From assembly GCA_964106645.2 (NCBI GenBank), contig CAXKZF020000004.1: a DNA stretch of 64,000 bases; one strand, written 5' to 3'. Position numbers and translations under genes: made by a program. Shown in pieces: positions 21,098 through 52,812 of the stretch (the first letter of the stretch is position 1; each line of letters begins with the position of its first letter). The notes beneath the pieces were generated by a model, which saw only the letters and a list, made by a program, of their open reading frames with translations, did not search any database and had not been told where the DNA came from. This DNA comes from Podarcis pityusensis. Lineage: Eukaryota.

Positions 21098-21137
<40 letters not shown>

Positions 21138-24100: not shown

Positions 24101-27100
24101 ATTGCAGTGGGTTGGAGGAGATGGCCTTTGGGGTCCCTTCCAATCCTATGATTCTTTGACAGAAAATAAGTATAAATCTGCTTTTAAAAAAGGAAGGAAG
24201 GAATAAAACCCTGTTTCGTTTCAGAGAGGTTCACCGCAGTACTGCTTTTTGAGTCCACGGAATCTGAATTTTGTTGCATGCGAATTACAATCGTAAGAAC
24301 CTGGTTGCTGTGATCAGGCCAGAGGCCAAACTTAGCCAGCACTCATAAGTGGCCAACCAGATGTTCATGAGAAGACCACAAGCAGAACAATGAGTGCAAC
24401 CGCCCTCTCTCCTCCCTCTGTGATTCCCAACCACTGGCCTTGCGATAAGCTCATCTCAATTCACTAAAAAACAAAAAGGCAGTGCATTTGAAAGCAGAGA
24501 TGGATCTGGGCGAGAAAATGTTGGAGGGGATGCCGGCAGGTGTGTGTCAAAGCCCCAACTCCCCCTTTTCCATCTCCAATGCTGATTCCTTGAGACTCTT
24601 AGTGAACACCTGTAAACCACCCCCTTCCCCAGCCCCAGCGTACATGCTCACACTGAGAAATTTGCTGACTTTGCAATGGACTGCTGTCAGTCAGCTGGAG
24701 TGACAGGTACAGGAGGCAGCTAATAACCACCAGCACCCCACGCACGGAAGGAAATACTGTGGGTAGTTGGGCCTGCCCCGAAAAAGGATGGAGCCACTCC
24801 CAAATGGTCAGCAAGGCACTTGGAAGATCACACGGAACTTCCCAAATACTCCACGAGAGATGCCAGCCTGCAAGGGCTCGGTTTTTTCGCTGCGCTATAA
24901 TCTTCCCCTCCCCCTCTCTGGAGGGCTGTAATTAAAGCGTACAGGCTGCACATGAGGCCCCCACTTATGCGCCACATGCGTTATGTAAGCCTGCAGTGCT
25001 CTTGCTGAAAGATTAGACATCAGTTCTAATGACATGTGTCGCCCACAGACATGCAGCAGCCCAGTTTACCCAAAGCTCAATAGAGCTTTTTTGCAATTCC
25101 AAGAATATTGACCAATTTAGGAACAAGTTCCCATAAGGGTAATGCACACAGTACGGTTTGATGGGGAAGCTTTAGGGGCAAACCTGGCTATATGTATTTA
25201 AAACAGATTATTTTCTGGATGCTCTTATAAACATGGGACCTCACAGCGTCACTATCAGGGTTAAAATCCCTGGCCTGCTACCAGGAGGACAATAATATTA
25301 ATCTGTCTTGACTAAACCTTAGCTGTCTTTCTAAAATGAGAATTACCTGTATCAATTTCAAAGTTGGGGGGGGGGACCCTGTTTATACAAGATATGGGCA
25401 ATGATCTCATTATCCCTGGGATGGAATGCCAGGAAATGCTGCGGGCTGAGAAGGAGGGACTCAATGAATAAGTTGTCCAAAAGAATTGGCAGAGGTTAAT
25501 GAAAATGGTTTCCAAACTGATCCAAGAAGCAGTGTGTGGTTCATTGGCAGAGGAAAGAGAAATCAATTTTTTTTTTCGAAATGGTGGGGGCAGCACAACA
25601 AAACTGATGACATCAGACACAGAAACGACGTCCTTTGTAAACATGTGGTTAGAGAGCACTTTGCTAGAATCAATGAAAAAAGCAGCTGGATGCTATAGAG
25701 TGCCATGAAACAATGAATAAGAGAGAGAGAGCGCGCACAGTAGTGTGAGCTGCTGAAATTTTCTGGAAAAGCAGGAATACTATTTTATGTCACGTGTTCT
25801 ACAACCGTTTGCATTTGTTCCAAATTAAAGAGTTCTACAGTGGTACCCCGCAAGACGAATGCCTCGCAAGACGGAAAACCCGCAAGACGAAAGGGTTTTC
25901 TGTTTTGGAGGCGCTTCGCAAGACGAATTTCCCTATGGGCTTGCTTCGCAAGACGAAAGCCCATAGGGAAATCTCCGGGGACCTCTTTTAAATGCTGGCG
26001 GTGGGGAGCAAAGCCTTTCCCCCCCTCCGGCCTTCAGAAGAGGTCCAGGAAGGCCGGCGGGGGCCGAAAGGCTTTGCTCCCCACCGCCAGCATTTTAAAA
26101 GCAGTCCGGGATAGCAGGGAAGAGCTTCCCGCTATCGCGGACGGCTTTTGAAGGCAGGCGGGGGGGCAAAGACTTTCGCCCCCCGCCCGCCTTCAGAAGA
26201 GGTCCAGGACCTCTTCTGAAGGCGGGCGGGGGGCGAAAGTCTTTGCTCCCCCCTGCCTGCCTTCCCGGGCGGCTTTTGAAGGCAGGCGGGGGGGGGGGGC
26301 AAAGACTTTCGCCCCCTGCCCGCCTTCAGAAGAGGTCCAGGACCTCTTCTGAAGGCGGGCGGGGGGTGAAAGTCTTTGCTCCCCCCTGCCTGCCTTCCCG
26401 GGAGAGCGGAGAAAGGCAGCGCCTTTCTCCGCTGTTCCGGACGGCTTTTGAAGGCAGGCGGGGGGGGGGGGGGCAAAGACTTTCGCCCCCCGCCCGCCTT
26501 CAGAAGAGGTCCAGGACCTCTTCTGAAGGCGGGCGGGGGGCGAAAGTCTTTGCTCCCCCCTGCCTGCCTTCCCGGGAGAGCGGAGAAAGGCAGCGCCTTT
26601 CTCCGCTGTTCCGGACGGCTTTTGAAGGCAGGCGGGGGGGGGCAAAGACTTTCGCCCCCCGCCCGCCTTCAGAAGAGGTCCAGGACCTCTTCTGAAGGCG
26701 GGCGGGGGGCAAAAGTCTTTGTCCCCCCTGCCTGCCTTCCCAGGGGCTTTTACATCGCCCCGGACAGCGGAGAAGTCCTCCGCTGTCCCGGGCGATTTTA
26801 AAATGCCGCCCGCCAGCATTTTGAGATCGCCCCGGACAGCGGAGAAGTCCTCCCCTGTCCCGGGGTTTTTTAAAATGCTGGGGGTGGGAAGAAAAGCCCT
26901 TGTTTCCCCCCCCCAGCCTTCAGAAGAGGTCGGGGGACAGACTGTCCCCGGACCTGGTCTGAAGGCGGTTTCCCTAGGAACGCATTAATTGATTTTCAAT
27001 GCATTCCTATGGGAAACCGTGCATCGCAAGACGAAAAACTCGCAAGAAGAAAAAACTTGCGGAACGAATTAATTTCGTCTTGCGAGGCACCACTGTAATG

Positions 27101-30100
27101 TATTTGCTGTTGCAGACGAGAAACAGAGAAATGGAAATCAGTATTAAGAAGCGTTAGGGTGCAATTTATGCTGCTCCAAAAATGCATCAAGATGAATGTC
27201 ATGAAAGTGTCCCCCCCCCAAAAAAAACCCCGATCCGGATCCCCAATTTTTGGAGATGTGGGAATAGGAAAACACAAAAGCAAAAATGTGTGCAGTAATG
27301 GGAACATAGGGAGTTGTCTTAGACCACATTAGGCTGCTGACCCACATAGGCCAGTGACTGACAGTGGCTCTCCAGAATTTCAGGATGGGGAGATGCCAGG
27401 AGCACGCAAACGCTATTAGCAACACCCATTTTTCATATTAGAAAGACTTTAAAGCAATTAAGCTCACTTCGATACAGTGGTGCCTCGCAAGACGAAATTA
27501 ATTCGTTCCGCGAGTTTTTTCGTCTTGCGGTTTTTTCGTCTTGCGAAGCACGGTGTCGGAAAAGTTTTGGAAAAGCTTCAAAAATCACCAAAGTCTTCAA
27601 AAACCTCAAAAAAGGCTACCACACCGCGTGCTATGAGTTGCTCCTCGAAGTCAAGTCGCAACTGTATTAACGGTTTTAAGAAAAAGGAAACAAACTTGCA
27701 AGACGTTTCCGTCTTGCGAAGCAAGCCCATAGGGAAAATCGTCTTGCGAAGCAACTCAAAAAACCAAAAACCCTTTCGTTTTGCGAGTTTTCCGTCTTGC
27801 GAGGCATTCGTCTTGCGAGGTACCACTGTATACTTGTTGCAGCAAGGACTGGATCCTGCTCCCTTCTCTTCCCATTAAACTGCAAGTTTTCTGCAAGTTC
27901 ACATGCTCCATGCTAAAATCTCCTCCTCTCTTCCCACCTCCAAAAACTTCTGGGTCCCAAGTTCATCAACGTTCTGCCTGGGAAGGTCTTTGTTTGCAAT
28001 TCAAATATTGTTTTGATTTGCTATGGGGTTTTATTTCTATTCGACGTACTGTGGGGGTTTCAAATAGGCCTGATGGAACCCTGGGTTTTTAAAGCAGCTT
28101 ACTGGGAGTTGAGCACCATGAGATGATCAGTATCGGTAGAACAGCTTTGCCTGAATCTCAAGCTCCCCACAGGATGCAGGTGAATTTAGAAGCGCTGTAC
28201 CAGCAACACACTCAAGCCAATGGGGAGGCATGATGGGCTGGCCAGCACCTTCCATGAAGAATGTGCCCCAGAATCCTTTGCCATATGCCGGTGGCTTGTG
28301 GTAGTTGTGTGGGGGGTTTGTTTCTCTCTATAGATGAGTCAATTTGGGGTGGGTGGGTGTTGCAGTACACACCAAAACAGCAAAAGGGAAGGTTTAAGTT
28401 TCCTGCAGACTATGCAAAGGAAACCACTGAGTCGCCGTATTTACCAACCCATTACAAAACAAAACACAATCTTTGTTATCCTTTCAAAAAGGCCTACGAT
28501 TACCTAACCAACAATGGCGATGAATGCACAGCGACTAACCCCCCCCGGGTGTTTGCGACCCACAGTTGGGGTATTCGGAGGTGGTTTTACTGCACTCCAA
28601 ATACACACAAAAAGAACCACTCACCCCAATTCTTTTGTCGTCAAAAGGGAACGCAGTTGCTGATTCATACGTTCCAAGCATTCCAATAGATCCATCAATC
28701 CCTTTAGCCCCACCGTTCATTGAAAACCTGGAACTGGGAGGGTGTTCTGAAATAATTGCCTACTAAGCTTCATTAAAAATAAAAGTGTTTGCCACTTCCG
28801 AGGCATGTGGCCTTTATTGAAGCTGGAGCTTCCTGCAGCGGTGAGCGAGATACACAAATCCTATTTAGTGCAAAACTGTGGGGGCTTCATTCTGTGTGGG
28901 GTTGGCTATTTAGACAATCAGCTCTGGGAAGCCTCTATATAGTACGCCGGTTGATGACTGAAGCTCATTCATGAATGGAGGACCATAAGTGCTTAGGGTA
29001 TTAAAAGGGCCATTGTGCTTGCAGCACTTAATAAAGTTAATTCAGCTATGCCAGTTGAATGAAGTGATAAAATTAATACTGCTACGTTAGTCTACTGGCT
29101 GCTCCTTCTACAACCCCCCTGCAAGTATATTTTAGAAACAGATTTTTATTTGGAGTGGGGAGGGGCACAGGGACACAGCGGGAGGTTTTACTCCCCCATC
29201 CCAGCAAGTCAAACCTGATGATTCCAAACTGGCTGAAATTTGAGAATTTTGCAAAAACACAGAAGGATACTGTAAGAGTTTTAAACACAAGGTGGCTCAG
29301 ATACACAGCGATGGGATATAAAAGAAGAAAGCCTCTTTCCCAGCCCATCAAGGGTTGTTATAAAACTGTTTGCTTCTTCCAACATCAAGAAGATTAAGCA
29401 GGGGTGTTGTTTCCCTTTACCTGCATTTTTTACCTGAAAGCCACAGAATCCCAAATGGGAACGATCCTTCTGGACATGCTTAATTTGAAGTTGGCAAGAC
29501 AAAAGGCAAGAAATCAGGTTTACAACAGAGCCGCAGTTTCAAGTCATCCTCTAATATCTGAGGATTTCAAGTGGAGCATTCTTGAGTCAGCTTAATCCCC
29601 TGACAATGCAGAAATCCAGTTTGAAGCTACATCAAGCTCTTTTTTTGTGTTAAGGCGCATGTCTTGATTTTTCTTTGCTAAAGAACTCGTTTGGCTTTAG
29701 CAGCCAGCTTTCCAAATTGGGAAACAGAACAAACCTGCAACCGACTTAAATCATCACGAACCACTTGTGGCTAATATGGTTTGCATCATTTCAAAGCCCA
29801 AGAGAAAGAACGACCAAGCAAGAGGGACGTTCATGTTTGGCAGAGAGCAAACTTAATTTCACACCTAAAGGTAGAAAATCAGCTTAGATTTAGCTGGTTC
29901 TTGAAGACTCAAAGGAGGCCAGGAACAAGAACTGGACTCTTGTGCATTTTACAGACTTACTTTTTTGACCTTGCAAAAAAGAAAAGAAAAAAGAAGGCTA
30001 ATAACTCACAAAATAATTAACTCTAGCTAGCATGCAAGAAAGCTAGACTTCAATGGGGAAAGGGAGTTGTGTTACCCTGCCCTGTGCATGGTAGGTCACA

Positions 30101-33100
30101 ACATCCTCACTCAACCATGGGAGAGGCACCCGCTGTGTATTCCCCAAACTCCTTCTCAGACTGCAGCCAGATGTGGAAAGAGCTGTTGCTTCTCCCAGAA
30201 ATTATCTGCACCTCCTTGGGATGCCCACCTTTAACGCCAGAGAACCGATGATTCCCAGTGTACCATATTCACTAAACGACTCCTATTCATCCCCCCTTAC
30301 TTCTTAAGTTGCTAGCCTGGGGTTGGGGGGGGGGGGTTAGAGCAACAGAAAAGCAAGTCATGCAAGAGAAACCTGCCTGATAAAATAGGGCTTACTTTCC
30401 CCTTGTTGCTATGCCACTAAGGCCCCGGATATGGTTACATGCTTCCAGCTACTAATCTGGAGAAAGCACTGTTCGAAGGGTAACGCAGTTTAGAACAAGA
30501 AGACGTGCAAATGAATGGCCACAATGCGGGGTTTGTTTGGAGAGACCTATTTAGCGGAGGTCAAAGGTTCTCTTCCATGCAACTGGTACCAGGGTTACTG
30601 CAAGTCAATTTCGAAAGTCACAAAAAAACCCCACCACAAGCACAGCGGAGGCATTTTGCAATGGAATGTCAGCGGAAGTGCCCTCCTTTAAGTCTTCAGA
30701 AATTGCACATATAAATGTCGGGAGCACTCTACTTAATATGCAGAGTTATGTAAATGAGGGGCTGCTGAAACCAACTTGCCAACACACCTCAAAGCAATGA
30801 GGGCACGAGTCTAGGTTTCAATGTTGAAAACAAGGCATAGTATGAGTTTCTAGACACAAGCACATGAATGAGATCGCTCCCCCTAAATTTGCATAGCTTG
30901 GTCCTGTTTTTTAGAGGACAGCCTGGAGGCAGATCACTGGCTGTAGAGAGCATCACCGCTGAGGTCACAGAGAGGAAGGCAATACTGTGACCCACTTATC
31001 ATCTCTTCTAATATCTACATTTTATCCCATCCTTTTCCGAAGGTGATGGCAGGACTAAACGGTAATCAGGCATTTAATACGGCACTGTTTAAAAATATCA
31101 GAACCTATTATGGCATGAGTCCTGTACATCTTAAAGAGTTCCTCTGCCTATAAAAGAACTTCTCTACTGTCCTGGACTGGCTGGGTGCAGAGGAATGCGG
31201 GGAGGAGCTGGCTGGGGAACTCCCAAGGGAAGAAGGCTCAAAGTCCGGGAAGAGGAGGTGTTTGAAGCTGAAGAGGTAACAGGGCTTAGTGAGTGAGAGG
31301 AGTCTACGGCAGAGATGTCCAGAATTGGTGGCAGAAGCTGAAGCAGAAGAGGGAGGCCAAGAGGCAAGGATGAGTGCAGCTGGTGAAGAAGCCAGGGAGT
31401 CTCCCCCTCCTGCGGGGACAAGCTCTCTTCCTCCCTGAAGAACCAGGAGAGGTCTGAAGAGGGTGGAGAAAGTGCAGGCTCAGATTGCTTGGGGTAAACC
31501 CTGGAGAAGAGGGGTCTTAGGCAGCTGTGGGGAGGTGGGGATCTCCTGTCTCCGCAAGTGCTTTGCAGGGGCAAGACCTGTTGGAGATTAGTTGCTGTGC
31601 TCATTAGTCTGGATACTCCTGTGCAGATCCTGTTGTTGTTGTTTTTTTCTAATAAAGAGTTAACTCCACCAACTGTGCTTTCCCGCTAGCTCACTCCTGG
31701 CATCTACCTACTGGTACTTGCTGAGATAAAGGTTTCTGTTCCTCGATAAGGGAGATGTAGCAAAGACCGGTTCAGTGCATTTTACGCACCCTCACTCTCC
31801 ACTGTGATGGGGAACCACACGTCCAGGGCCCCAATACGGCTACCCAGGCCTCTCTGTTCTGGCCCTCTGAATCTTCCCTGGCCACACCCCTTAACACTAC
31901 ACCCTCCTTGAGTGTTTTTGCCTGTCTAGACTGTGTCCTTGACCTCCAACAAGGCTTTGTGCTTGCCTGGATAGAGAACAGAGAGGGATGCATAGAAACT
32001 AACCTACGATTCGAAAAGTTAAACTTATCCGATGTTACACCACCCTCTTTTCTCAGTCCCCACCCAAAAGAGTATGTGGCAGCTCACCTCGGCCTCTCCC
32101 CAGGAGGCACAACTGCCCCACACAATTCTCAAGGGGCAGTTTTAAGTTGCTAACGCCAGAACACTGGCACACCCTTGGGTGAGTGTAAAAGCCTGCCCTG
32201 CGTTCAAACTGAGGTTCCTTCTGAGCCATCCAACCCACAGGTCTTTGGACAAGTTACGGCCAGTTTAAGCTCACCGGGGTCAAAGAGAGGCGTAAAAGAT
32301 TTCCGAGAAGAGTTATGGCACAAACACCTTTCTAGGCCAATATTTTGCAAGCTAAGCTCCTTATTTGTAGGCAACATTTCGCAAACAAAGCTCTGCCTTC
32401 TACTGTATGCCTCCATATATATATATTTTTGATGGCTTTACATTATGCAGCAAAAGCCGCTGAACGTTCACTCATTGTGGATAATCTGTCTGAGAGATCT
32501 GCAGTTAATTGAGAGACATGTCTTGCATCTTAAGATAAAGTCTTCAACACTACTGAGAGCTGCACATCACTCACTTCCAACTTAGATCAATCCCTTTTGA
32601 TAATCACTATCCCGTATGCTATGTATGTCACACTCTAAGGTTAACATTACAAATGTGTAGTGTAGACATCCTTGAGTCAATGTAAATAAGTTAATTTGTT
32701 CAGATTTCCCACCCTATCCTGAGGGTTCAAAACTAAATTGGTGCTTCTAAGCAACACCGTGTGAGGTAGTGTTAGGTAAGAAATGTGGCTTCCCCAAGGC
32801 CAAACAGCAACGTGGCCCCTTGTCTTCTGCATATGTGAATGAAACATGATCTACTGTTCTACCTGGGCTTCTTAAAAAAAAGACGAGGACTTAGATTAGG
32901 CTTTGGAACATCTAAACTGAAATCTAATTCTAAGCATTACTATACTCCTATTGCACAAGCAACAGCTTCAAACCATCAAAACATCAGGAGACATTGGAAT
33001 ATGTATTATTTGCTGAGTAATGTGAACTTCAAGAGCTGAGTCAACTTTGAAAGAAGATGGACTTTGGTACTGGAAGATCAACATTATTGCGACTTTAAAA

Positions 33101-35299
33101 GTGTGGTGTCAGTTGACGTTTCAAGGATAGCTGAAATAGTTGGCTTTTGAACAGGGATTTGCAATGACCTGGGGAGAACCTCAGAAAAAGCAGAACAGCT
33201 CAATAGTGTGCTACAGGTAAGGCCTAGAACCACAAAAGGCCAGGAATGAGTACAAAAACGTGTGTCCAATAGTGTCCTTAGGGTACGGTGAATGGGGGTG
33301 ATCGCCCCAGTCCTCAAACCTGGGGAGCCACGCACAGGTTAACACAAAGCACTGTGTCACCCAAGGTGAATGTTACTGCCTTGGCTCTTTGCTTCCCTCT
33401 CCTTTGGCTAAGGAAGCTGTTCTGCTGCTGCTAACATGGCAGTAGCCACTTCCCCTCTTACTCTTAGGAAGGTGGGGGGTCCTTCTCCGAGCCAGGCATT
33501 CTCGAGGTAGCCCAGACCAGCGCTTGTGTCACCGCCACTTCAAAGTTGCTTTCAACATCACTAAATGAACGCTGGGCTTTCCTTTGAAGCCTGGAACAAA
33601 CTAGCCTACCCATAAATACAGCAGAGAGCTAAATCCTTTAGGATTGCCAAATGCACACCTGGGGAGGCAATAATGGGATGGCTGTATTGGAAAGTTGGGG
33701 GGGGGGGGTAATTTAGTAGAGTGCAACATGTAGCAGTATCTATTGCCAGGTAGTTGGATGTGCAGCTGGTGATATCGGCCTTGACTAGAAGCCAGGGTGG
33801 ATAAAAAAAATCAAAATAAAAAAAATATCAGATTTTTAAAATTTAAATTGGATTTTTTTTAAAAAAATTGGATTTTTAATATAAAATGCTTTTGAAGGAA
33901 AAATCTTTCTAAAGATAACTTTGTATTTAATTTACACTATAGTCCAAAGGCTATTCATCAGGAAATAAGGATTTAAGTTTTTCATGTGTGCTAAAACTCA
34001 GCCTAAATTTTTGGTTTTTGTTTTAAAAATGTTTTAACCACATCAGTTAACAAACATGTATACATATGCTATAATGTTATTGTTTTAGTTAAATAAATTG
34101 TTTAAATTGTTATTAAGGAAACGATTGTTTTTCTCCTTCCAATTAAGTACAGCAGCAAAGTTGTCCAAATATAAACAGTTAACTTATTAAACCTCATAAT
34201 AATTTCATAATTATCTGTCTATTTCTAATAGTATAACCAAATCAGTAATTTTTGATATAACTGTAAAACCTACTCTGAAAATTTATTATTCCAAAAATGA
34301 AACCTTCATCTTGTTGTAAATATTAAGATTATACCAGCAAGAATGAGTCTTTCTGTAATTTTTTTTTTATTTAAATCAAGTTTTACTGACTAGTAAAGCA
34401 TGATTCAAATTGATTTGATTTAAATCAAATCCACCCTGCCAGAAGCTAAAAGTTTTGCAAGTCCTCTAAGGATGAAAGTAGAAAAAGGAAAAGGGAAGGC
34501 ACAGAAGGCAGAAAAATTAAGGTAACTCTTAGGAAACACAAACACACCAATAATGGGATCAGTTAATTTCTTCATATGATACCTACAAATCTGCCTTATT
34601 CAGTGAAAGTTACAGTTCCTTCTAACTCCCAACGCCACCACACCAGCCTTGTAGGGTTTGGATATTCCTTCCTGAACTAGGGTTTTGTTGAATGATACTG
34701 CAGCATGGCGATTGGCTGGCACACAGGGAGGCAAACTGGGTTGGGTGGCTGGATGATGGCGTTACTTCTCACGTCAGCATGGCACCTCCCTTGGAGCCAA
34801 GACACTGGTATGGAAAGTAATCGCATGATCCACTCAACCCGCATGGCTCCTGGTTACACTGATGTGGATTGAGGGTTCCACCATAGGAGTGGCTTCCTGA
34901 GAACCAGTGGCTTGTATGCTGTGGTCCCTGCTTGCCTCTTGAAGAGGTGGGTACAGCAAAATCAGAAAACACCTCCAGAGGGCCAACTTGTTCTGCTGTT
35001 TCATGGATAACAGAGGATGAACGATGGCGACTGTTCATGGTTATGCAATTCCACTTACCTATTTGTAACAATACTGGCGTCACCAAAGCTGTCTCCATGG
35101 CGTAACAGAATTCTCTGCCAAACATCACGGCCCCGTGCATCACCCAGAGACGTACAGGTATCCGATCTATGGATCCTTCGCTTATGGTCTCTTCCTTACT
35201 CTCATTCTCGTTTTCCGGTTTCTGAAGCTGAACCACGGGTAGCTCTTCAACTTGCATAGATTCCGAGTCAGCATTCTGGGGAGCCATTTTCATTACCAT
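3292..35299 (-). CDS. SLC45A4: Solute carrier family 45 member 4 (MFS-fold transporter); spliced CDS of 7 coding exons, 787 aa
   Basis: The joined exons (241+189+180+1076+100+212+366 = 2364 nt) read without a break from [16 protein letters not shown] to [10 protein letters not shown]. Recognisable SLC45A4 segments include [30 protein letters not shown] and [19 protein letters not shown]. All introns are GT-AG with matching phases. Confidence 0.97.
3790..4623 (+). mobile_element. L1-clade LINE ORF2 3' fragment, interrupted by a MITE
   Basis: Translates to [18 protein letters not shown] (part of a C-terminal Cys/His motif) and continues after 4108 in degenerate form. Confidence 0.6.
3854..4106. 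mobile_element. Tc1/mariner-superfamily MITE
   Basis: TA|CAGTCATACCTC...GAGGTACCACTG|TA termini with TA duplication; internal GCATGCGC-like repeats. Confidence 0.8.
4624..4753. other. Assembly gap (130 N)
   Basis: Run of n characters in the last SLC45A4 intron. Confidence 1.
5088..5299 (-). CDS. SLC45A4: SLC45A4 coding exon 6 (212 nt)
   Basis: Acceptor CCTTTTTGCAG|CCTTG and donor GCAG|GTAGGT. Encodes [13 protein letters not shown]...[13 protein letters not shown]. Confidence 0.96.
5520..5619 (-). CDS. SLC45A4: SLC45A4 coding exon 5 (100 nt)
   Basis: Acceptor CTTCACTGCAG|GCCCCT and donor TCAG|GTAAGA. Encodes [33 protein letters not shown]. Confidence 0.95.
5639..5959. mobile_element. hAT-type MITE (family A)
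   Basis: TIRs CAGGGGTCAGCAAAC / GTTTGCCTACCCATG and a degenerate 8-bp TSD (caatagag/caattaag). Homologous copies at 49746 and 52574. Confidence 0.8.
6040..6515 (-). mobile_element. Older L2-like LINE 3' fragment
   Basis: Diverged similarity to the reverse complement of the L2 at 61488-62385 (e.g. ggctttacaggtcaaaaccagaactttgaattg), with an (ATTG)n tail remnant. Confidence 0.55.
6859..7934 (-). CDS. SLC45A4: SLC45A4 coding exon 4 (1076 nt; includes the large central cytoplasmic loop)
   Basis: Acceptor CCTTCCTTAG|GTCTTGG and donor CAAG|GTGAGT. Lies within ORF 6796..8100 and reads [15 protein letters not shown]...[16 protein letters not shown]. Confidence 0.97.
8553..8700 (-). mobile_element. 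tRNA-derived squamate SINE (Squam3-like), 3' part
   Basis: Reverse complement of the element at 13985-14155 (ggaagctgccttatac...ctggctggcagcagc). The family name is tentative. Confidence 0.45.
8734..8913 (-). CDS. SLC45A4: SLC45A4 coding exon 3 (180 nt)
   Basis: Acceptor TTCCTGCCAG|GCCTGG and donor GCTG|GTATGT. Encodes [60 protein letters not shown]. Confidence 0.96.
9159..9633 (+). mobile_element. L2 LINE 3' fragment with (TTA)n tail, split by a 90-bp MITE
   Basis: Colinear with 62012-62385 on both sides of 9314-9403. Confidence 0.85.
9314..9403. mobile_element. 90-bp hAT-type miniature element
   Basis: TIRs CATAGCTGACAAC / GTTGACACCTATG (11/13 complementary) and a perfect 8-bp TSD CACCCACC (9306-9313 and 9404-9411). 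Confidence 0.85.
10350..10571 (-). mobile_element. Bov-B (RTE) LINE 3' fragment with an internal deletion
   Basis: (TTG)n tail followed by tttagtcgtgtccgactcttcgtgacccca, the reverse complement of the 3' end at 11056-11173. Confidence 0.85.
10757..10789. repeat. (TAC)n microsatellite
   Basis: Seen directly. Confidence 0.9.
10855..11178 (+). mobile_element. Bov-B (RTE) LINE 3' fragment
   Basis: [40 protein letters not shown]...[12 protein letters not shown] is a typical Bov-B RT C-terminus; (CAA)n tail. Confidence 0.9.
11823..12258 (+). mobile_element. LINE 3' UTR of uncertain clade
   Basis: T-rich tract ending ggtctgtgaccgtaataaa followed by an (ATTC)n tail. Confidence 0.4.
12481..12669 (-). 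CDS. SLC45A4: SLC45A4 coding exon 2 (189 nt)
   Basis: Acceptor TCTTTTAG|GTCTTCCT and donor ATAG|GTAAAT. Encodes [63 protein letters not shown]. Confidence 0.96.
13237..13455 (-). mobile_element. CR1 LINE 3' fragment
   Basis: agaatcat...gggtcatctagtccaacccc...catccatgacagatggcca, shared with 57164-57570. Confidence 0.75.
13456..13980 (-). mobile_element. Probable L1-clade LINE 3' fragment
   Basis: Degenerate minus-strand coding-like segment ([12 protein letters not shown]-like) with an A/T-rich 3' region. Confidence 0.4.
13985..14155 (+). mobile_element. tRNA-derived squamate SINE (Squam3-like)
   Basis: Head with A/B-box remnants (gtagagcat...ggttcaaccccc) and tail gctagatggacca...cttcctatgtt. 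Confidence 0.5.
14234..14583 (-). mobile_element. Sauria SINE
   Basis: Full-length copy with a tRNA-like head (ggttcgaatcccc on the minus strand) and an ACCTTT tail; near-identical to other copies in the window. Confidence 0.92.
16369..16723 (-). mobile_element. Sauria SINE
   Basis: Same family as 14234-14583. Confidence 0.9.
18467..18816 (+). mobile_element. Sauria SINE
   Basis: gggacgcgggtggcgctgtgg...ccctttacctt with a 14-bp TSD TTATACAGCAAGAG (18453-18466, 18817-18830). Confidence 0.95.
18850..19370 (+). mobile_element. Probable RTE-type retroelement 5' region fragment
   Basis: Motifs such as ggctaaaccagggagggtag and aaactctgatcctaaacctccgctgcc resemble RTE 5' UTRs; recognised from memory only. 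Confidence 0.3.
19790..19926 (-). mobile_element. Probable RTE-type element 5' end
   Basis: The minus strand begins TTGTTGGCAAGCGTCTGTCTTGAGAGACAATGGAG with a short hairpin. Family assignment is tentative. Confidence 0.3.
20155..20296 (+). mobile_element. SINE with tRNA-Lys-like head and CR1-like tail
   Basis: gctcagacggtagagcatgagactc..atctcaggg...ttcgagccccac matches tRNA-Lys(CTT); tail gggtcccttcc...ttctgtgattcta. A second copy lies at 24021-24155. Confidence 0.7.
21017..21097 (+). mobile_element. tRNA-Ile-like SINE head, truncated next to an L2 tail
   Basis: tagctcagttggtcagagcatggtgctgataacgcc...ggttcgatacccgta; the acceptor stem does not pair. Confidence 0.6.
21098..21551 (-). mobile_element. 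L2 LINE 3' fragment with expanded (CAA)n/(TTA)n tail
   Basis: Reverse complement of 61975-62350. Confidence 0.88.
22615..22964 (-). mobile_element. Sauria SINE
   Basis: Full length, with a 13-bp TSD GGTCCTATCTATA (22602-22614, 22966-22978). Confidence 0.95.
24021..24155 (+). mobile_element. SINE with tRNA-Lys-like head and CR1-like tail
   Basis: Homologous to 20155-20296. Confidence 0.6.
25838..27095. mobile_element. Non-autonomous Tc1/mariner-superfamily element with an internal GC-rich palindromic array
   Basis: TA|CAGTGGTACCCCGCAAGACG...CGTCTTGCGAGGCACCACTG|TA with subterminal CGCAAGACG repeats; no transposase-like ORF. Confidence 0.88.
26140..26740. repeat. Tandem array of four long palindromes
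   Basis: Unit GCAAAGACTTTCGCCCCCCGCCCGCCTTCAGAAGAGGTCC-A-(reverse complement), centred at 26206, 26339, 26513 and 26682. Confidence 0.95.
27475..27828. mobile_element. Short MITE of the same family as 25838-27095, in inverted orientation
   Basis: TA|CAGTGGTGCCTCGCAAGACG...CGTCTTGCGAGGTACCACTG|TA. Its ends are reverse complements of the long copy's ends. Confidence 0.88.
31168..31702 (+). mobile_element. Solo LTR (535 bp; Gypsy-like or ERV)
   Basis: TG...CA termini, 5-bp TSD TCTAC (31163-31167, 31703-31707), AATAAA at 31651. Confidence 0.75.
33793..34438. mobile_element. AT-rich hAT-type MITE (family B), copy 1
   Basis: TIR CAGGGTGGAT / ATCCACCCTG with 8-bp TSD ctagaagc/ccagaagc. Confidence 0.9.
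35059..35299 (-). CDS. SLC45A4: SLC45A4 coding exon 1 (N-terminus and TM1), 241 nt coding
   Basis: ATG at 35299, with further in-frame ATGs at 35293 and 35287. Donor ATAG|GTAAGT at 35059/35058. Encodes 80 codons plus 1 nt. Confidence 0.95.
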
Positions 35300-35347
35300 A
35301 AAAATATATATAATATATATATTTATATATTTATTTATTTATTCTAC

Positions 35348-35494
35348 CTATATAAATAACACTATCATCTCTAACGATAAGTTACGGTGTCTTCTCTTTC
35401 TGATGGCGTCACGTTCCTCGTGCAAGCAATATTTGTAATTCCCCTCGTTACGAACAGGTTCCGTCATCAATTTCGTGTGTAGGCGTTGAAACAT
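35348..35494 (-). other. uORF4, 48 aa (MFQRLHTKLMTEPVRNEGNYKYCLHEERDAIRKRRHRNLSLEMIVLFI*)
   Basis: ATG at 35494 to TAG at 35350-35348. Ends 48 nt before the main ATG and contains 10 CpGs in 147 nt. Confidence 0.6.
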
Positions 35495-35535
35495 TCAGAG
35501 GAACAAAAAGCTATATTTGGTAGGAAATTCAACAT
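35467..35535 (-). other. uORF3, 22 aa (MLNFLPNIAFCSSECFNAYTRN*)
   Basis: ATG at 35535 to TGA at 35469-35467. The stop overlaps an internal ATG of uORF4 (TGATG). Confidence 0.55.
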
Positions 35536-35560
35536 ATGGCTTGCTGGGCTTGCGTTTTGC

Positions 35561-35707
35561 TTACTGTGAACTAGAGTTAAAAATCCATAATTGCCATTCA
35601 GTTAATACCAGTTTCATAATTATTATTGAAGAGGTGCTGAAGTTGTTTTGCTTGCTACACAAAGGTGGAAAGGTGACACAAACAGCTGCTCCACTGGTAA
35701 TCCCCAT
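35561..35707 (-). other. uORF1, 48 aa (MGITSGAAVCVTFPPLCSKQNNFSTSSIIIMKLVLTEWQLWIFNSSSQ*)
   Basis: ATG at 35707 to TAA at 35563-35561, inside the UTR part of the exon. The frame is also open from the exon's first base. Confidence 0.6.
35577..35597 (-). other. uORF2, 6 aa (MAIMDF*), nested in uORF1 in another frame
   Basis: ATG GCA ATT ATG GAT TTT TAA read directly from the sequence. Confidence 0.55.
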
Positions 35708-35751
35708 CGAGTGGCTGATTAATCTGCAAAGAAGGACAAAAGGCAAGTCAC

Positions 35752-36355
35752 CAGGGTGGATAAATATCAATGATTGCTTTTTTTAAAAAAATGGATTTTA
35801 AAATTTTAAATTGGATTTTTAAAATAAAATGCTTTTGGAGGAAAAATCTTTCTATAGATAGTTTTCTATGTAAGTTACACTATAGTCCAAAGACTATTCA
35901 TCAGGAAATAAGGATTTGTTTTAAGTTTTTCATGTGTGCTAAAACTCAGTCTAAGTTTCTTATTAAAAAATGTGCTTAACCACATCAGTTAAGAAACATG
36001 GATATGTATGCTGTAATGTTATTGTTTTAGTTAAATAAAATTGTTTGAATTGTTATTAAGGAAATGATTATTTTTCTCCTTCCAATAAAGTACAGCAGAA
36101 AAGTTGTCCAAATATAAACAGTTAACTTATTAAACCTCAGAATAATTTCATAATTATCTATGTATTTCTAATAGTACAACCAAATCAGTAATTTTTGATA
36201 TATCTGTAAAAACTACTCTGAAAAATTCTTATTCCAAAAATGAAACCTTCATCTGGCTGTAAATATTAAGATTATACCAGTAATGAGACTTTCTATTTAA
36301 AAAAATGATTTAAATCAAGTCTTAGTGACTAGTGATTTAAATCAAATCCACCCTG
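35752..36355. mobile_element. AT-rich hAT-type MITE (family B), copy 2
   Basis: Same TIRs, 8-bp TSD caagtcac/caagttac; colinear with copy 1. Confidence 0.9.
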
Positions 36356-38646
36356 CAAGTTACAGACCATCAGGGCACCTTGAGATGAGCTATATCTCCT
36401 TTCCCTGTTCTAGGAATGTAAATGAACTCAAATCAAAGCCTCTTCCACCACGCTTATGGACATGTCCCCAAATTATGCTCTCACTGTGAACACATAGCTC
36501 CATGGAATCTATGGCTCCACGTTAAGCGACTTTTATTATATTATTTAGTACATTTGTATTTCCTTCAATCAAGGAATTCAAGGACCCAGACCTACTAAGC
36601 TTCAGCAAGGTGGATTCAACAGATTTCCTCAACTTTGTCAAGCAGCTTGAGGCAGCTGAAAGGGCTGTGGCTTTTCAGTTCTCCTGATCAGGCTGTGCCC
36701 AATTACACTTCAAAAAAGTTTCTGTAACTGAGAACAAGTACTCAAATATGCTTATTTCCTCCACCCTCTCGATCCATCTTCCTTTTGTGTCATTTTTTAA
36801 AGGCTAAGCCTGAGGGCAGAGACGGCCTTTTTAAAAAAGCAATTTAAAAAAGCAATTTGTAAGTTGATATCTGGGAGTAAGCAACCATCAAACATAACAC
36901 TTGCTAGTCCTGGTAAGAGTCACAGTTGCACTGGTTGTTAATTATATATCAGTATCGTTGAGCAGACTTCCAGGATGTACTACTGCAAGTAGCAAGTAGC
37001 ATACACCGGGGCTCTCCAGAAAGGGTAGGTTTGAGAGCTCAAATCTAGCTGTTCAGTTAACTATATGATTTGCTTAAAGAACAAATGATAGCTTTCAGTG
37101 ACTAAAGCGTACAGTCCTAATTTAGGACGTCAACACTGTTTACAGTGAGCTAACGCCAATCTGAGTTATTTAATGATTCTCTGCTCTGTCCAATTTGCAT
37201 CTAATTCTGCACAGATTATTATGCACCAAGATACATTTATCAAAGAAAGCACTGTGGACTGCAAGAAGGTGAAATGATGATAACATTCCCATGTTTCAGT
37301 TCCCCCCACCTCCACCATTTTCTGGAAATTAAATGCTGGGTCTGTTATCTCCATCCATTATCAACGGATCACAAATGACAACAATGGTTTATCTTTCTAG
37401 GTCAGAAAGATGCACAAACATGCAAGTTCAGGCCTATAATCTCCACGGCGATAATTTCAAAGATATGAAATGATCTGGCAGATTCCTTAGTCATAAACAC
37501 TCACGATACTTTATGCAGATATGTTCTGTTGTTGCTGACCTTGTTTGGCAGTTGTGCTCAGTACAAGTCTCCTCCACGACAAACAAGATGTGAGCCCAAC
37601 AAGTGAAATGTGCTATTGCACAACTGTTAGAGACTTTTAGAAACTGGGGAAGAAGAGTCCTCGACTGGAGATGCCCATTTCTTATTATCTCAATTATTCC
37701 ACATTGATCTAGCCGTACATCAAAGCTGCATGCATTGCTGGTGGGGATGTATTGGTAAGGAAACCCAGCTCACATGCAAACCAAACAGGCAATCACATTA
37801 AACGGGAGTAAATGAATGGCAAAAGGGAGACTTCGCTGGGATGTGAATGCGGTTCCTTGTGGACAAATATTTCAGCTTCTGTTATTCAAGTGTGGAGCTT
37901 ATCACAGGGCTGTAGCAGTTCAATAAACCTGCGACTCTGACCTAATTTCCAACAGAAACTGGCACTGCGAATTGTTTTGTATTAAAAATAAAAATCTGCT
38001 CCTGTAACAAGAAATGATGCCGAATTATGTGCTTGCTTTTTAAATCACTTGCAAAACACAAACCTGGTTATGCACAGGTAGGGTTGCCTTTTTTCAAAAA
38101 GTGAAAATCCAGAAAGGAAAATTGTTGAGCTTTGAGCTTCTTTGAGGCCAAAGTTGTTGACTTTTTTTTTTTTTTTTTGCAAAATTGAGCCTTTTCTGAG
38201 GATGACTGGCAAATTGGCAAAACCGACACTGCCATATGCCATACGTATGGATTTTCCAGGATATTTCGCCAAATTCTGCACAGAAACGGCTTGCAGCTAC
38301 AGTATTCAGGATATGTCAGGGAAATTGTCATGTTCTGTGTTCAGGATCTAAAGAGCTACAGGTTAAGGCTGCTCCTTCTCAAAAGGAGACCTCCAGGCCA
38401 CATCACAAGCCACTTTTGAAGTTCCTTCGGTTTCAAAATCAGCTTGCCATGCAGCGCTGCAGGTTGCTTGTCGAAAGCAGGAATCAAGTGTCCCCAGAAC
38501 TAGAAGCATGATTATTCAGTCATGCACAATTCTACTACTGTTCCATAATAGTAACTGGACTTGTTGCAACTATTGGCGGCAATGATTTAAAAACAGAGAA
38601 ATCTAATAGTGGCAACCAAGATACCAATGGCTAGATTACTTAAATA

Positions 38647-38890
38647 CAGTGGTACCTCGGGTTAAGTACTTAATTCGTTCCGGAGGTCCGTACTTAACCT
38701 GAAACTGTTCTTAACCTGAAGCACCACTTAAGCTAATGGGGCCTCCTGCTGCTGCCGCGCCGCCAGAGCACGATTTCTGTTCTCATCCTGAAGCAAAGTT
38801 CTTAACCTGAAGCACTATTTCTGGGTTAGCGGAGTCTGTAACCTGAAGCATATGTATAACTTGAAGCGTATGTAACCCGAGGCACCACTG
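38647..38890. mobile_element. Tc1/mariner-superfamily MITE
   Basis: TA|CAGTGGTACCTCGGGTTA...TAACCCGAGGCACCACTG|TA with repeated TAACCTGAA motifs. Confidence 0.85.
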
Positions 38891-41334
38891 TATGTAGAAT
38901 AGAATCACTGTTGTAATAATGGGTGTAGGCGTTGAGTTGTAGTGCCTTGATAGAAATACTAACTAATGCATAAAGATAGGGTCCCTTCCAACTCTAGAAT
39001 TGTATGATATGAAGTTGAAACAAAAGAACTTACACCTTCTGAATATAAAAAGTGTTGATAAGAGAAGCATCAGTCCAAAATGAGAAACCGCGCACTGAAT
39101 TTCAAACTCCTACATTCCAGGAATGGATGAACTCAGCAAGTTTTATCCAACACTGATCTAAATCCTATGGGAATGAGCTCATGCAACCTAATAAGATCCC
39201 AGGTTGTTGTTGCTGTTTTCTAACTTTGCTAGCAATAAGATCTCCTGCAAGGCTGGCACAAGACATGGCGTGTGAAGTGATACTCCAAGTTCTGCTCTAT
39301 TTAGGCTGAGGCCTGAATACAATCCTCATTCATACAAGTGGTGGCTGGCTAGGCATACAAATGACTATGTTGCTTGTATGGAACCTCCATGCTTAAGTGA
39401 CGGCATGGCAGTGAATCCAAGATGTCCAGGGGAAGAAAATGACAGAATGCGTCCATGTCTTTACACCCTGTTTGTGGACTTCGCCAAGGCATCTAACTGG
39501 TCACTAGAGGAAGCAGGATGCTGAAAAAGATGGACCTTTGGTCTGATCCTGCAGGGCTCCTAATGAGTGTGGATCACTATAGACATTCCAGCAGGATCCT
39601 GGCTGAGTGAACAGTTTGATGCTCAGAGACAAATAGGAGATTGATAAGTCCATCCATCAAGGCAAGGCAACTGGCTGGTCTGCACCTAACTGGACCAGCC
39701 CAAGTGGCTGAAATAGGGTCATATGTTAACACTGAACACATGACACATTATGGATGAATTGCCTCCAAAGGATCTCACTGGGCCTTGGGGAGCACTTGTA
39801 AATGGTGACCCATTTTCAATATTCCTAAATTAGCTTGCAACACCCTTTCCTTTCATGCCCATCAGTGTCTTGCTTCTCTAGCATTTTGCAATGGCCTGAA
39901 AGGGCAATAAAACTTTGGCTGCAACTGTAGTATCGTGTCTGTTCACATCCCCTAAGATAAGGAAGACATTGACTTTTCATGATCTGTCTTGCTGCCAGGC
40001 AAAGGTTAGCAGGTTTAATTATACCTTATGCCAATTATTGATTACAAGGGCAAACATTTAAGAAAGACTATTTAAAGCAAGACTATCACAATTAGCGATC
40101 CCTTTATAAGACACCCTAACTTACGGAAAGACTGTATGGTCATTGCAAAGGTCCAAAAGACGGATTAGATTTGTAAATGAGAAGAATCAAGGGCCAGTGG
40201 TGCTTATTGCTCCTGGATTCTTGTATCAGATACCTATGGTCTCCCCTTTGCTTCTCTTAATTGCTCAGATGTTCTAATGTTATAGCGGTCCTGGACATCA
40301 AATCTATCCTACCGATCTGCCATTGTTCTGGTGTTATGAAGAAACTTTCTGGCTTAGGCTCGAGGCAAGTTAATGCTCAGGAGGCCCCGAGAACCTGAAT
40401 GCCAACACTGAAAAGCAACCTATGCAGAAGTGAACCTCTGTGCATCGAAAATTCAACGTTAAGGCTCATTTGTGTGGCAGGCCCAGGAACTGTACACCTG
40501 CATACTTCAATGGTGCACCCGTGCTGCTCAGATTCTGGAAACCAGATGTGCCATTCTAAGGCTTCAAAATCCTGCAGTTGCCATTCAGACGGCGCTTGCC
40601 CAAGGAGCACAGAAGGTAGGCAGTTATTTGCCTGGCTCCCTGAGCCAAGCATGACAACAGCACCCAGTGTGTACTACGCTGCATAGGCCAGGGAGTGGCA
40701 TGCCTTTAGAGCTTTACGAATAGGGAATTATCTCAGAGATGCTATCTTTCAGCATCTAATATTGCAGGTATCATCCATGGGTGTACGTTCTCAGATTACA
40801 AGAGGCCCTTTGTGTGCCCCTTGTTACCAGCTTGAAATGTGAGAGTTCTTTCATCATGGCCCATTGCCTCATAATGGAGAGAGAGTGAGCAAGATGTGAC
40901 TTGCTTCTAGTCTCATGATATTGACAACATCTCTTTTTACCAGCCTGTACGGATGCATGCAGTAACTCTCCGGACCCAGAATTTGTGCTCTTTTGGGGAT
41001 AAGCAGCTATGGGATGGGGTGCTTTGTATCTTAACTGCTGTAGGATTTCAGTGTGATGATTACATGAGGCTTCCCTTTGCTAAAATTACCCGTATTCTAA
41101 TGGATAAATGTCAAATTCCATATGGAAACAGGGAAGGCTTACCTCAAGAGTCATCACCAAACCAAAGCCACTTGCCCATACCTCAACGGTTGTGTGACCA
41201 ACCATTTGGTGGCTGGTGTCACAAGCCAAGGCCACAAGGAGAAACTGCAGCGTCACTCACTGCAGGGGGTTGGAATAGGGTCCCTTCTAACTCTACAATT
41301 CTGTGATTCATGCACAACCTTTAGTACATATGTA

Positions 41335-41845
41335 CAGTGGTATCTTGGTTCTCAAACTTAATCCGTTCTGGAAGTCCGTTCTAAAACCAAAGCGTTTCTA
41401 AACCAAGGCGTGCTTTCCCATAGAAAGTAATGCAAAACAGATTAATCCATTCCAGACTTTTAAAAACAACCCCTAAAACAGCAATTTAACATGAATTTTA
41501 CTATCAAACGAGACCACTGATCCATAAAATGAAAGCAATAAACAATGTACTGCAGTCATGCAATCAATCAATCAATCAGTAGCTGAACTGGGTTCCACAT
41601 AGTCACAAAAACAAAAAAAGAGCGCCACAATAACAAAAATGCAAAATAAATAGCAAAAACAGACAGACCTCTCTGTAACACTCAAAAGAGAAGTATGGCA
41701 CTCAAATCGGAAGCGTAACACTCAAAACGGAGCACGTTCGGCTTCCGAAAAACGTTTGCAAACCACAACACTTACTTCTGGGTTTGCAATGTTTGGGTTC
41801 CAAGTTGTTTGAGCACGAAGGTGTTTGAGAACCAAGGTACCACTG
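41335..41845. mobile_element. Tc1/mariner-superfamily MITE
   Basis: TA|CAGTGGTATCTTGGTTCTCAAAC...GTTTGAGAACCAAGGTACCACTG|TA. Confidence 0.85.
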
Positions 41846-44678: not shown

Positions 44679-44904
44679 CAGTGGACGCTCGGGTTGCGAA
44701 CGTGATCCGCAGCTGCGCGTCTGTGCATGCGCGGGTTGCGATTCAGCGCTTCTGTGCATGCGCAAAGCGCAATTCAGTACTTCTGCGCATGCGCGACCAC
44801 CAAAAACGAAAGTAACCTGTTCCGGTACTTCCGGGTTTTGGCAGTCCGTAACCCAAAAAAACACACAAAAAACCCCTGAAGCGTCTGTAACCCGAGGTAG
44901 ACTG
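44679..44904. mobile_element. Tc1/mariner-superfamily MITE, related to 3854-4106 (inverted)
   Basis: TA|CAGTGGACGCTCGGGTT...AACCCGAGGTAGACTG|TA with three GCATGCGC repeats. Confidence 0.78.
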
Positions 44905-44989
44905 TAAATGCACCAGATGAGAATTGGATAGTGGTAAGGTGACTCAAGTAATGTACTATTGCTAATGCTTGCTTATGCATTGTAAAGAG

Positions 44990-45287
44990 TGTTATGTACT
45001 GAGTTGAATAGGATCCAAGATGCCGCAGTCTGATTGGTCCTAGAACAATAGGATTCAGAATGCAGCAGTCTGATTGGTCCACAGGAGCCACCCAATCCAG
45101 CTCCAGGTGGAAGTGAATCCACAACCTGATTGGCCTACAGAAGAATCCCGGAATTAGCCAATCACGTGGGGCCCATCGTGTACATAAGGTATATAAAGCA
45201 GACATTCTGGGGGAACTTCCATTCCTCCTCACCACTATGAGCTGAATAAAGAGCATGAAATCCACTCTTGACTCTGAGTATATTTCA
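44990..45287 (+). mobile_element. Solo LTR (298 bp)
   Basis: TG...CA termini, 4-bp TSD AGAG, five CCAAT/ATTGG boxes, TATATAAA at 45190 and AATAAA at 45245. Confidence 0.85.
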
Positions 45288-52778: not shown

Positions 52779-52812
52779 CTAGACCTTGACTTCATTTGTT
52801 TTGTTGTATATA

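What the first reader, a model, noticed from the sequence alone, without database searches (positions are those of the whole stretch)
35059..35723. Likely circSLC45A4 exon; back-splicing closes an 81-aa ORF right after the junction
Established (from memory): mammalian SLC45A4 produces an abundant neural circular RNA from its start-codon-containing exon. Seen: here that exon is 665 nt, with strong splice sites and long flanking introns. Joining donor 35059 to acceptor 35723 gives ...CAA ATA G|AT TAA. The main ORF would then read MVMKMAPQ...LLQI-D-stop, an 81-aa peptide of the N-terminus plus first TM helix, and the circle keeps the A/U tract before the AUG. Inference: the locus may yield a circle-encoded or regulatory micro-product, and circularisation removes the start codon from the linear mRNA.
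Basis: partly seen in the sequence, partly recalled or inferred. Interest (0 to 1): 0.8.

Follow-up and report, generated by a model that had tools for sequence, protein, structure and literature searches.

The report
Conserved SLC45A4 start exon with uORF
This is the start-codon exon of a lizard's SLC45A4 polyamine-transporter gene, the counterpart of the exon that forms a known brain circular RNA in mammals. The predicted 81-residue circle product is correct arithmetic but unproven, and the exon's strongest signal is an old, conserved upstream reading frame in its leader.

Summary
Window 35059-35723 (minus strand) is the start-codon exon of an SLC45A4 orthologue: 665 nt, acceptor ...tttgcag|ATTAATC, donor ATAG|gtaagt. 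Joining donor to acceptor reads ATA G|AT TAA, an 81-codon frame.

In 12 tetrapods, similarity starts exactly at the acceptor AG and stops at the donor, so both exon ends are real. The exon matches the about 640-nt single exon reported as human circSLC45A4 (641 nt). It lies between a 22.4-kb intron and an intron of at least 28 kb.

The stop after the junction is kept in 9 of 12 species. It is lost in both placentals sampled and in a boa, where the frame runs on to 107-115 codons. It is therefore not a kept feature in the clade where the circle is known, and it sits in a generally conserved leader. Chance gives about 7%.

New here is a 48-codon upstream reading frame (35707-35561). Its start, frame and stop position are conserved from frog to mammals.

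Verdict: a known kind of exon, a speculative micro-peptide, and a conserved uORF worth testing.

The parts
35059..35723 (-). SLC45A4 exon 2 (start-codon exon), 665 nt: a 424-nt leader plus 241 nt of coding sequence
   Evidence: Boundaries are conserved in 12 tetrapods.
35724..35742 (-). Acceptor: pyrimidine-rich tract ending in cag
   Evidence: An AG sits at the same place in all 12 species, and similarity begins right after it.
35053..35058 (-). Donor gtaagt, after a phase-1 exon end (...ATA G)
   Evidence: The pattern G|GTAAGT (GTGAGT in Tamandua) follows LLQI in all 12 species.
35059..35299 (-). First 80 codons plus 1 nt of SLC45A4: N-terminal tail and TM1. In-frame ATGs at 35299, 35293 and 35287.
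   Evidence: PDB 9GIU residues 1-80, E 2e-31. TM1 residues from PMC12507699.
35719..35721 (-). TAA at exon nt 3-5, which would end the main frame one codon after a back-splice junction
   Evidence: Kept in 9 of 12 species. Lost in Candoia, Tamandua and Peromyscus.
35561..35707 (-). uORF1: conserved upstream reading frame of 48 codons plus stop. The ATG is at exon nt 17.
   Evidence: Same start in 12 of 12 species. 48 codons in 10 species, 47 and 42 in the other two through in-frame deletions. The stop is at the same place as TAA, TGA or TAG. There are 0 in-frame stops against 3-7 in each other frame.
35561..35617 (-). Near-invariant last 18 codons of uORF1, with their own ATG (A at -3)
   Evidence: Identity is 0.96-0.98. 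Variable sites by codon position are 2, 2, 6.
35348..35368 (-). Six-codon uORF (MIVLFI, stop) close to the main ATG. Its ATG is present in 10 of the 12 species; the six-codon frame itself is kept in 9 (8 codons in Dermochelys).
   Evidence: and, for Tamandua, the alignment. The ATG is absent in Tachyglossus and Xenopus.
35300..35343 (-). 44-nt A/T-only tract directly before the main ATG. Its length varies between species.
12670..35058 (-). Intron after the exon, 22,389 nt
   Evidence: The same intron is 17-46 kb in the 11 other tetrapods.
12481..12669 (-). Exon 3, 189 nt, phase 1 to phase 1. It begins G|GT CTT CCT (GLPEQYY...).
35724..64000 (-). Intron before the exon, at least 28.3 kb. Exon 1 and the promoter are not in the window.
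   Evidence: No CpG island. Only repeat-derived ORFs.
48486..48857 (.). Interspersed repeat in the upstream intron, reverse-complementary to copies in the downstream intron (22614-22964, 16369-16723, 14235-14582). Further pairs are 54277-54622 with 18469-18816, and 61976-62382 with 21144-21550.
   Evidence: All lie at least 12 kb from the splice sites and are outnumbered by pairs within one intron.

Best explanation
The stretch is the conserved second exon of the lizard SLC45A4 (polyamine transporter) gene: a 424-nt 5' leader plus the first 80 codons.

Shown:
- Gene identity, both splice sites, and the long flanking introns.
- Correspondence to the about 640-nt exon that is the single-exon circle circSLC45A4 in mammals.
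- The fact that a back-splice would close the main frame after one extra codon.

Inferred:
- The exon probably also circularises in squamates.
- The immediate stop is a by-product of a conserved exon start (ATTAATCAG), not a selected feature of a circle-encoded peptide.
- The main selective constraint on the leader is its role in the linear mRNA. The leader carries eight upstream ATGs. Among them is a 48-codon uORF whose start, frame and stop position have been kept for the whole tetrapod radiation.
- This uORF most likely captures scanning ribosomes and limits or gates initiation at the SLC45A4 ATG.
- Any circle carries the whole uORF and the start codon with it.
For: - Identity: E 2e-31 to SLC45A4 residues 1-80. 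Downstream exons of the same gene lie on the same strand.
- Boundaries: similarity in 12 tetrapods starts at the AG and ends at the donor.
- Circle orthology: the human circle is a single exon of 641 nt (PMC12888668), against 632-653 nt for this exon in four mammals. circSLC45A4 is reported as conserved between human and mouse (PMC11260338).
- Stop not specific: it is lost in 3 of 12 species, including both placentals sampled. The chance of a stop per codon is 0.07.
- uORF1: the ATG is at exon nt 17 in 12 of 12 species. The only indels are 3 and 18 nt, whereas only 25 of 118 gap runs in the rest of the leader are multiples of three.
- uORF1 stop: three different stop codons occur at one position. 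There are 0 in-frame stops against 3-7 in the other frames.
- uORF1 substitutions: pN/pS is about 0.5. There is a third-position excess in the last 18 codons.
Against: - No RNA data of any kind were obtained for this species. Neither back-splicing nor uORF translation is shown.
- Synonymous divergence in uORF1 is far below neutral (pS 0.32 lizard to frog), so part of the constraint acts on the RNA itself. That could equally be a function of the circle or a protein-binding site.
- The first 30 codons of uORF1 show no codon-position bias (21, 19, 22).
- The TAA after the junction is retained from frog to marsupial, which a by-product reading explains only through general leader conservation.
Confidence: 0.72

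Rival explanations
1. The exon circularises in lizard neural tissue and the circle is translated from the host ATG, helped by the A/U tract. This would give a functional 81-residue N-terminus-plus-TM1 micro-protein ending in Asp.
For: - The architecture is that of circ-ZNF609: second exon, host start codon, stop 3 nt after the junction (PMC5387670).
- The TAA is kept in 9 of 12 tetrapods.
- A 44-nt A/T tract precedes the ATG.
Against: - The stop is lost in both placentals sampled and in a boa, with unrelated 26-34-residue tails.
- No translation or junction evidence exists. Reviews list the mechanism of the mammalian circle as unknown.
- A lone TM1 of a 12-helix carrier has no evident fold.
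- Seven upstream ATGs and uORF1 lie between the junction and the ATG.
- Chance accounts for an early stop.
Confidence: 0.05
2. The leader is conserved because the circular RNA itself, as a non-coding molecule that binds proteins or microRNAs, needs these sequences. On this reading the open frame of uORF1 is incidental.
For: - Nucleotide conservation exceeds what a peptide needs. A block of about 45 nt is invariant or nearly so in 11 species, and pS is low.
- Knock-down of the mammalian circle has phenotypes.
Against: - An incidental frame would not keep only in-frame indels.
- It would not switch among TAA, TGA and TAG at one site.
- It would not stay stop-free in 12 lineages while the other frames carry 3-7 stops.
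- No conserved secondary structure was found: consensus energy -11.4 kcal/mol over 235 columns, covariation term +0.25.
Confidence: 0.2
3. uORF1 encodes a stand-alone 48-residue micro-protein with its own function, made from the linear leader or from the circle, rather than acting as a cis-regulatory uORF.
For: - Length and C-terminal 18 residues are conserved.
- There is a moderately hydrophobic C-terminal segment (Kyte-Doolittle 1.19 over 19 residues).
- pN/pS is below 1.
Against: - The N-terminal 30 codons evolve without codon-position bias, and pN/pS reaches 1.0 between the two placentals.
- No database or literature support could be sought by sequence. No paper in the library links SLC45A4 to a uORF or micro-protein.
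Confidence: 0.15
4. The exon does not circularise appreciably in squamates. It works only as part of the linear mRNA, and the circle is a mammalian trait.
For: - Reverse-complementary repeat pairs across the exon are few (6), at least 12 kb from the splice sites, and outnumbered by pairs within one intron.
- No conserved intronic elements lie next to the exon.
- No non-mammalian circSLC45A4 report was found.
Against: - Exon size, strong splice sites and very long flanking introns are kept in all tetrapods.
- Long introns around a 5' exon favour back-splicing in general (established knowledge).
Confidence: 0.35

Closest known systems
circSLC45A4 / hsa_circ_0001829 of human and mouse (Suenkel et al. 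2020, cited in PMC11260338 and PMC10503630; size in PMC12888668)
   Same: Same gene. The lizard stretch is a single internal exon of about 640 nt that holds the leader and start codon, with conserved splice sites and long flanking introns.
   Different: Circularisation is shown only in mammals and nothing is shown in squamates. In the two placentals sampled, the main frame does not stop right after the junction, as it would in the lizard. The primary paper is not in the library, so the statement that the human circle is this exon rests on size, position and my recollection.
circ-ZNF609 (Legnini et al. 2017, PMC5387670)
   Same: Second exon of the host gene, carrying the host start codon. An in-frame stop would be created 3 nt after the back-splice junction.
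   Different: circ-ZNF609 has polysome, tagging and mass-spectrometry evidence and a 753-nt frame. Here the frame is 81 codons, there is no translation evidence, and the stop is not kept in placentals.
Conserved regulatory uORFs of polyamine-pathway genes (AMD1 MAGDIS uORF, AZIN1 upstream conserved coding region); named from my own knowledge
   Same: A deeply conserved upstream reading frame in the leader of a gene of polyamine homeostasis, with a conserved C-terminal peptide and a fixed stop position.
   Different: There is no sequence relation. No polyamine responsiveness has been tested. uORF1 starts at an AUG and is 48 codons, longer than MAGDIS. The link to polyamines is only an idea.

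Membership tests
SLC45A4 orthologue, start-codon exon | Encoded residues homologous to the SLC45A4 N-terminus and TM1 | tested here: met
   E 2e-31 to 9GIU residues 1-80. 97.5% identical to Pogona SLC45A4 residues 1-81.
SLC45A4 orthologue, start-codon exon | Same exon end and phase as orthologues, followed by the other exons of the gene on the same strand | tested here: met
   LLQI G|GTAAGT in 12 of 12 species. Exons at 12669-12481, 8914-8729, 7941-6853, 5622-5521, 5303-5046 and 3660-3295.
Exonic circular RNA (circSLC45A4) | Reads or PCR products joining the donor to the upstream acceptor, and RNase R resistance | not testable with these tools
No reads were laid.
Exonic circular RNA (circSLC45A4) | Orthology of the exon to the circularised mammalian exon | tested here: met
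   The human circle is a single exon of 641 nt. This exon is 632-653 nt in four mammals and is alignable end to end with the lizard exon. No human DNA was used.
Exonic circular RNA (circSLC45A4) | Canonical splice sites and long flanking introns | tested here: met
   introns of 22.4 kb and at least 28.3 kb.
Exonic circular RNA (circSLC45A4) | Reverse-complementary intronic repeats that bring the splice sites together | tested here: inconclusive
   Six pairs, all at least 12 kb from the exon. More pairs lie within single introns.
Translated start-codon circle (circ-ZNF609 type) | Host AUG inside the circle and an in-frame stop reached after the junction | tested here: met
   G|AT TAA, 81 codons.
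Translated start-codon circle (circ-ZNF609 type) | Conservation of the circle-specific frame end | tested here: not met
   Lost in Candoia, Tamandua and Peromyscus (107, 114 and 115 codons).
Translated start-codon circle (circ-ZNF609 type) | Polysome association or a detected peptide | not testable with these tools
   No ribosome or proteome data within reach.
Conserved (peptide) uORF | Start codon, reading frame and stop position conserved across distant species | tested here: met
   12 of 12 tetrapods. In-frame indels only. TAA, TGA and TAG occur at one site.
Conserved (peptide) uORF | Purifying selection on the encoded peptide | tested here: inconclusive
   pN/pS is 0.05-1.0, mostly about 0.5. 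The last 18 codons vary at positions 2, 2, 6, but the first 30 at 21, 19, 22. Nucleotide-level constraint confounds the measure.
Conserved (peptide) uORF | Ribosome occupancy and an effect on downstream translation | not testable with these tools
   No data within reach.

The most novel reading that the evidence does not exclude
The label 'highly conserved' attached to circSLC45A4 may largely reflect a translated 48-codon uORF (window 35707-35561) that has been kept since before frogs and amniotes split. On this reading the uORF gates translation of the SLC45A4 polyamine transporter, possibly as a polyamine-sensitive stalling peptide like those of AMD1 and AZIN1. Because it lies wholly inside the circularised exon, it could also be expressed from, or sequestered by, the circle.
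Probability: 0.3. Interest if true: 0.65.

Novelty: new member of a known kind. Interest (0 to 1): 0.42.

Why it matters
As filed, the finding adds little. A squamate has the orthologue of a known circular-RNA exon, and the 81-residue closure repeats the circ-ZNF609 pattern without evidence of translation.

Two results make it more useful.

First, the comparison gives a clear negative for the peptide idea. The junction-proximal stop is ancestral in tetrapods but was given up in placentals, the only clade where the circle has been studied.

Second, the exon's leader holds a 48-codon upstream frame conserved over the whole tetrapod radiation, in a gene now known to carry polyamines (PMC12507699, PMC12634670). 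I found no paper in the library that links SLC45A4 to a uORF.

If the uORF is translated, it offers:
- a testable control point for neuronal polyamine uptake;
- an alternative explanation for why the circle's sequence is so conserved.

The second point bears on how knock-down phenotypes of circSLC45A4 are read.

Tried and rejected
- Because of that, the uORF1 peptide and the 81-residue product were not searched in any protein, family, Rfam or atlas tool. Novelty of uORF1 rests on word searches only.
Frames across the junction were computed only inside local scripts.
- Proteins named Homo sapiens (P0048-P0050) and an unlabelled Logan protein with a human-like N-terminus (P0047) appeared in the hit lists. 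They were not fetched, aligned or looked up further. No human contig was fetched.
- Pogona isoform X2 (P0001) is not on record for locus look-up. Full-length orthologues were used instead.
- Conserved RNA structure in exon nt 1-215: not supported.
- Repeat-mediated looping: only distant pairs, so neither for nor against.
- Primary circSLC45A4 paper: not held.
- Supplement searches for an SLC45A4 small ORF: none found, or files not held.
- Earlier notes of this scan: nothing at this place.
- Plus-strand ORFs over the exon (35017-35259, 35517-35786) were taken as chance frames. They have no start or stop conservation to test and are antisense to a conserved coding exon.

Full report
**What is in the sequence**

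On the minus strand a pyrimidine-rich tract ends in cag at 35726-35724, and the exon begins at 35723 with ATTAATCAG. An ATG at 35299 opens a frame of 80 codons. The frame ends ...CAA ATA G at 35059 and is followed by gtaagt. The exon is 665 nt: 424 nt of leader and 241 nt of coding sequence, ending in phase 1.

Joining 35059 to 35723 reads G|AT TAA. A 44-nt A/T-only tract (35343-35300) sits directly before the ATG.

**Which gene**

The 80 residues match residues 1-80 of the solved SLC45A4 structures 9GIU and 9GHZ at E 2e-31, and the match ends at the exon end. A 434-codon frame at 8100-6796 matches residues 202-546 of the same protein at E 1e-152.

With squamate and bird orthologues found by the word search, local tblastn places the other exons on the same strand:
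- 12669-12481
- 8914-8729
- 7941-6853
- 5622-5521
- 5303-5046
- 3660-3295

Exon 3 starts G|GT CTT CCT (GLPEQYY) after a cttttag acceptor. The intron after the start-codon exon is therefore 22,389 nt.

The 28.3 kb upstream of the exon holds no CpG island and only repeat-derived frames. Exon 1 lies outside the window.

The closest proteins are those of lacertid lizards, at about 93%. Glu63 and Tyr66, both in the exon, are assigned to TM1 by the structure paper (PMC12507699). This confirms 'N-terminus plus first TM helix'.

**Are the exon ends real?**

I fetched the genomic loci of full-length orthologues from 11 tetrapods:
- Podarcis, Eublepharis, Candoia
- Dermochelys, Alligator, Struthio
- Tachyglossus, Sarcophilus, Tamandua, Peromyscus
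- Xenopus

In all of them the coding part ends LLQI G|GTAAGT, with GTGAGT in Tamandua. Aligning the 600 nt before the ATG shows no similarity in the intron. An abrupt onset of strong similarity comes exactly after a (c/t)ag, with the exon starting ATTAATCAG in most species.

Identity of the other species to the window base is 0.5-0.98 inside the exon (11 species). In the flanks (10 species, Podarcis left out) it is about 0.5 in the 25 nt next to each splice site. It falls to 0.2-0.3 by about 25 nt upstream of the acceptor and about 100 nt downstream of the donor. Both splice sites are thus fixed by conservation.

The exon is 585-666 nt in all species, and the following intron is 17-46 kb.

**Relation to the known circle**

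[quoted passage not shown] The circBase entry hsa_circ_0001829 is described as a single-exon SLC45A4 circle of 641 nt (PMC12888668).

The start-codon exon is 632-653 nt in the four mammals sampled. It is the only internal exon of that size, since the others here are about 100-260 nt or about 1,090 nt. I therefore take the lizard exon as the orthologue of the circularised exon.

The primary paper is not in the library. That the human circle holds the start codon rests on this size argument and on recollection.

**Could back-splicing be tested?**

No. 

Junction frames were computed only in local scripts.

Indirect features are neutral. There are six reverse-complementary repeat pairs across the exon, but all lie at least 12 kb from the splice sites and are outnumbered by pairs within one intron. 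No intronic element next to the exon is conserved.

**Is the stop after the junction meaningful?**

From the leader's base composition, the first full codon after the junction is a stop with probability 0.07, and one of the first ten codons is a stop with probability 0.53.

The TAA is kept in 9 of 12 species, across frog, turtle, alligator, ostrich, two lizards, gecko, echidna and Tasmanian devil. It is lost in three:
- Candoia (ATTTATCAG)
- Tamandua (ATCAACCAG)
- Peromyscus (ATCCTCTAG)

In those three the frame runs on to 107, 114 and 115 codons.

The stop is therefore ancestral but was abandoned in both placentals sampled, the clade where the circle is known. It also sits in a 25-nt block that is 0.94 identical as a whole. 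This is what general leader conservation predicts, and it does not single out the stop.

The layout equals that of circ-ZNF609: second exon, host AUG, stop 3 nt after the junction (PMC5387670). The translation evidence that makes that case is absent here.

**What the conservation does single out**

The leader has eight upstream ATGs in the window. The first, at exon nt 17 (35707), opens a frame that ends at 35561.

In all 12 species:
- An ATG sits at exon nt 17.
- The frame has 48 codons. The exceptions are 47 in Alligator and 42 in Candoia, through deletions of 3 and 18 nt.
- It ends at the same aligned position, using TAA in ten species, TGA in Peromyscus and TAG in Xenopus.
- The frame has no internal stop, while the other two frames over the same span carry 3-7 each.

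Elsewhere in the leader only 25 of 118 gap runs are multiples of three.

The last 18 codons have their own ATG (35617, A at -3) and are nearly invariant. Their few variable sites fall 2, 2, 6 by codon position. The first 30 codons vary without position bias (21, 19, 22). Pairwise pN/pS is mostly about 0.5.

The position of uORF1 relative to the main frame differs among species, so it is not an N-terminal extension.

Synonymous divergence is far below neutral, so the RNA sequence itself is also constrained. A consensus fold finds no supported structure.

A six-codon uORF (35368-35348) has its ATG in 10 of the 12 species and keeps its six-codon frame in 9 (8 codons in Dermochelys). The ATG is absent in Tachyglossus and Xenopus (Tamandua from the alignment).

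**Reading**

The exon is an ordinary, deeply conserved SLC45A4 exon 2 and the orthologue of a known circle-forming exon. The micro-peptide idea is not excluded but has nothing specific in its favour, and the placental loss counts against it.

The best-supported function of the leader is translational control of the transporter through uORF1 and the other upstream ATGs. Any circle would carry uORF1 and the start codon with it.

SLC45A4 transports polyamines (PMC12507699, PMC12634670), and several polyamine genes are controlled by conserved uORFs (my own knowledge). A polyamine-sensing role is therefore an attractive but untested idea.

No paper in the library links SLC45A4 with a uORF or micro-protein. 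I could not search the peptide by sequence, so prior description elsewhere is not excluded.

Noticed in passing
window 12481-12669 (minus): Exon 3 is 189 nt and in frame (63 codons). The 723-724-residue 'isoform X2' proteins of Pogona, emu and kiwi lack exactly this exon, so it is annotated as a cassette exon in other sauropsids. Skipping it would remove 63 residues directly after TM1.
   Followed up: partly
window 35285-35299 (minus): Sauropsids start the annotated protein MVMKMAPQ, with three in-frame ATGs. Mammals and frog start MKMAPQ. Only the third ATG (35287) has a strong context (A at -3, G at +4), so the real start may be MAPQ. That would make the circle frame 77 rather than 81 codons.
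   Followed up: partly
window 25750-27560: GC-rich island (GC up to 0.67) inside intron 2. It has tandem 133- and 174-nt units that are themselves palindromic, and flanking 16-nt repeats in inverted orientation. It may be a transposon remnant or an internal promoter-like island.
   Followed up: no
window 61424-62269 (plus): 281-codon frame with the look of a retrotransposon reverse-transcriptase tail, inside a repeat whose copies also lie at 59852-60229, 54819-54998 and 21144-21550.
   Followed up: no
window 35535-35537 (ATG at exon nt 189) and 35586-35588 (exon nt 136), minus: Two further upstream ATGs are present in all 12 tetrapods: MDF-stop inside uORF1 in another frame, and the ATG in the conserved block GCCATATG. 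The frame opened by the second one varies from 12 to 37 codons.
   Followed up: partly
window 4624-4753: Run of N (assembly gap or masked) between SLC45A4 exons. Left as it is.
   Followed up: no
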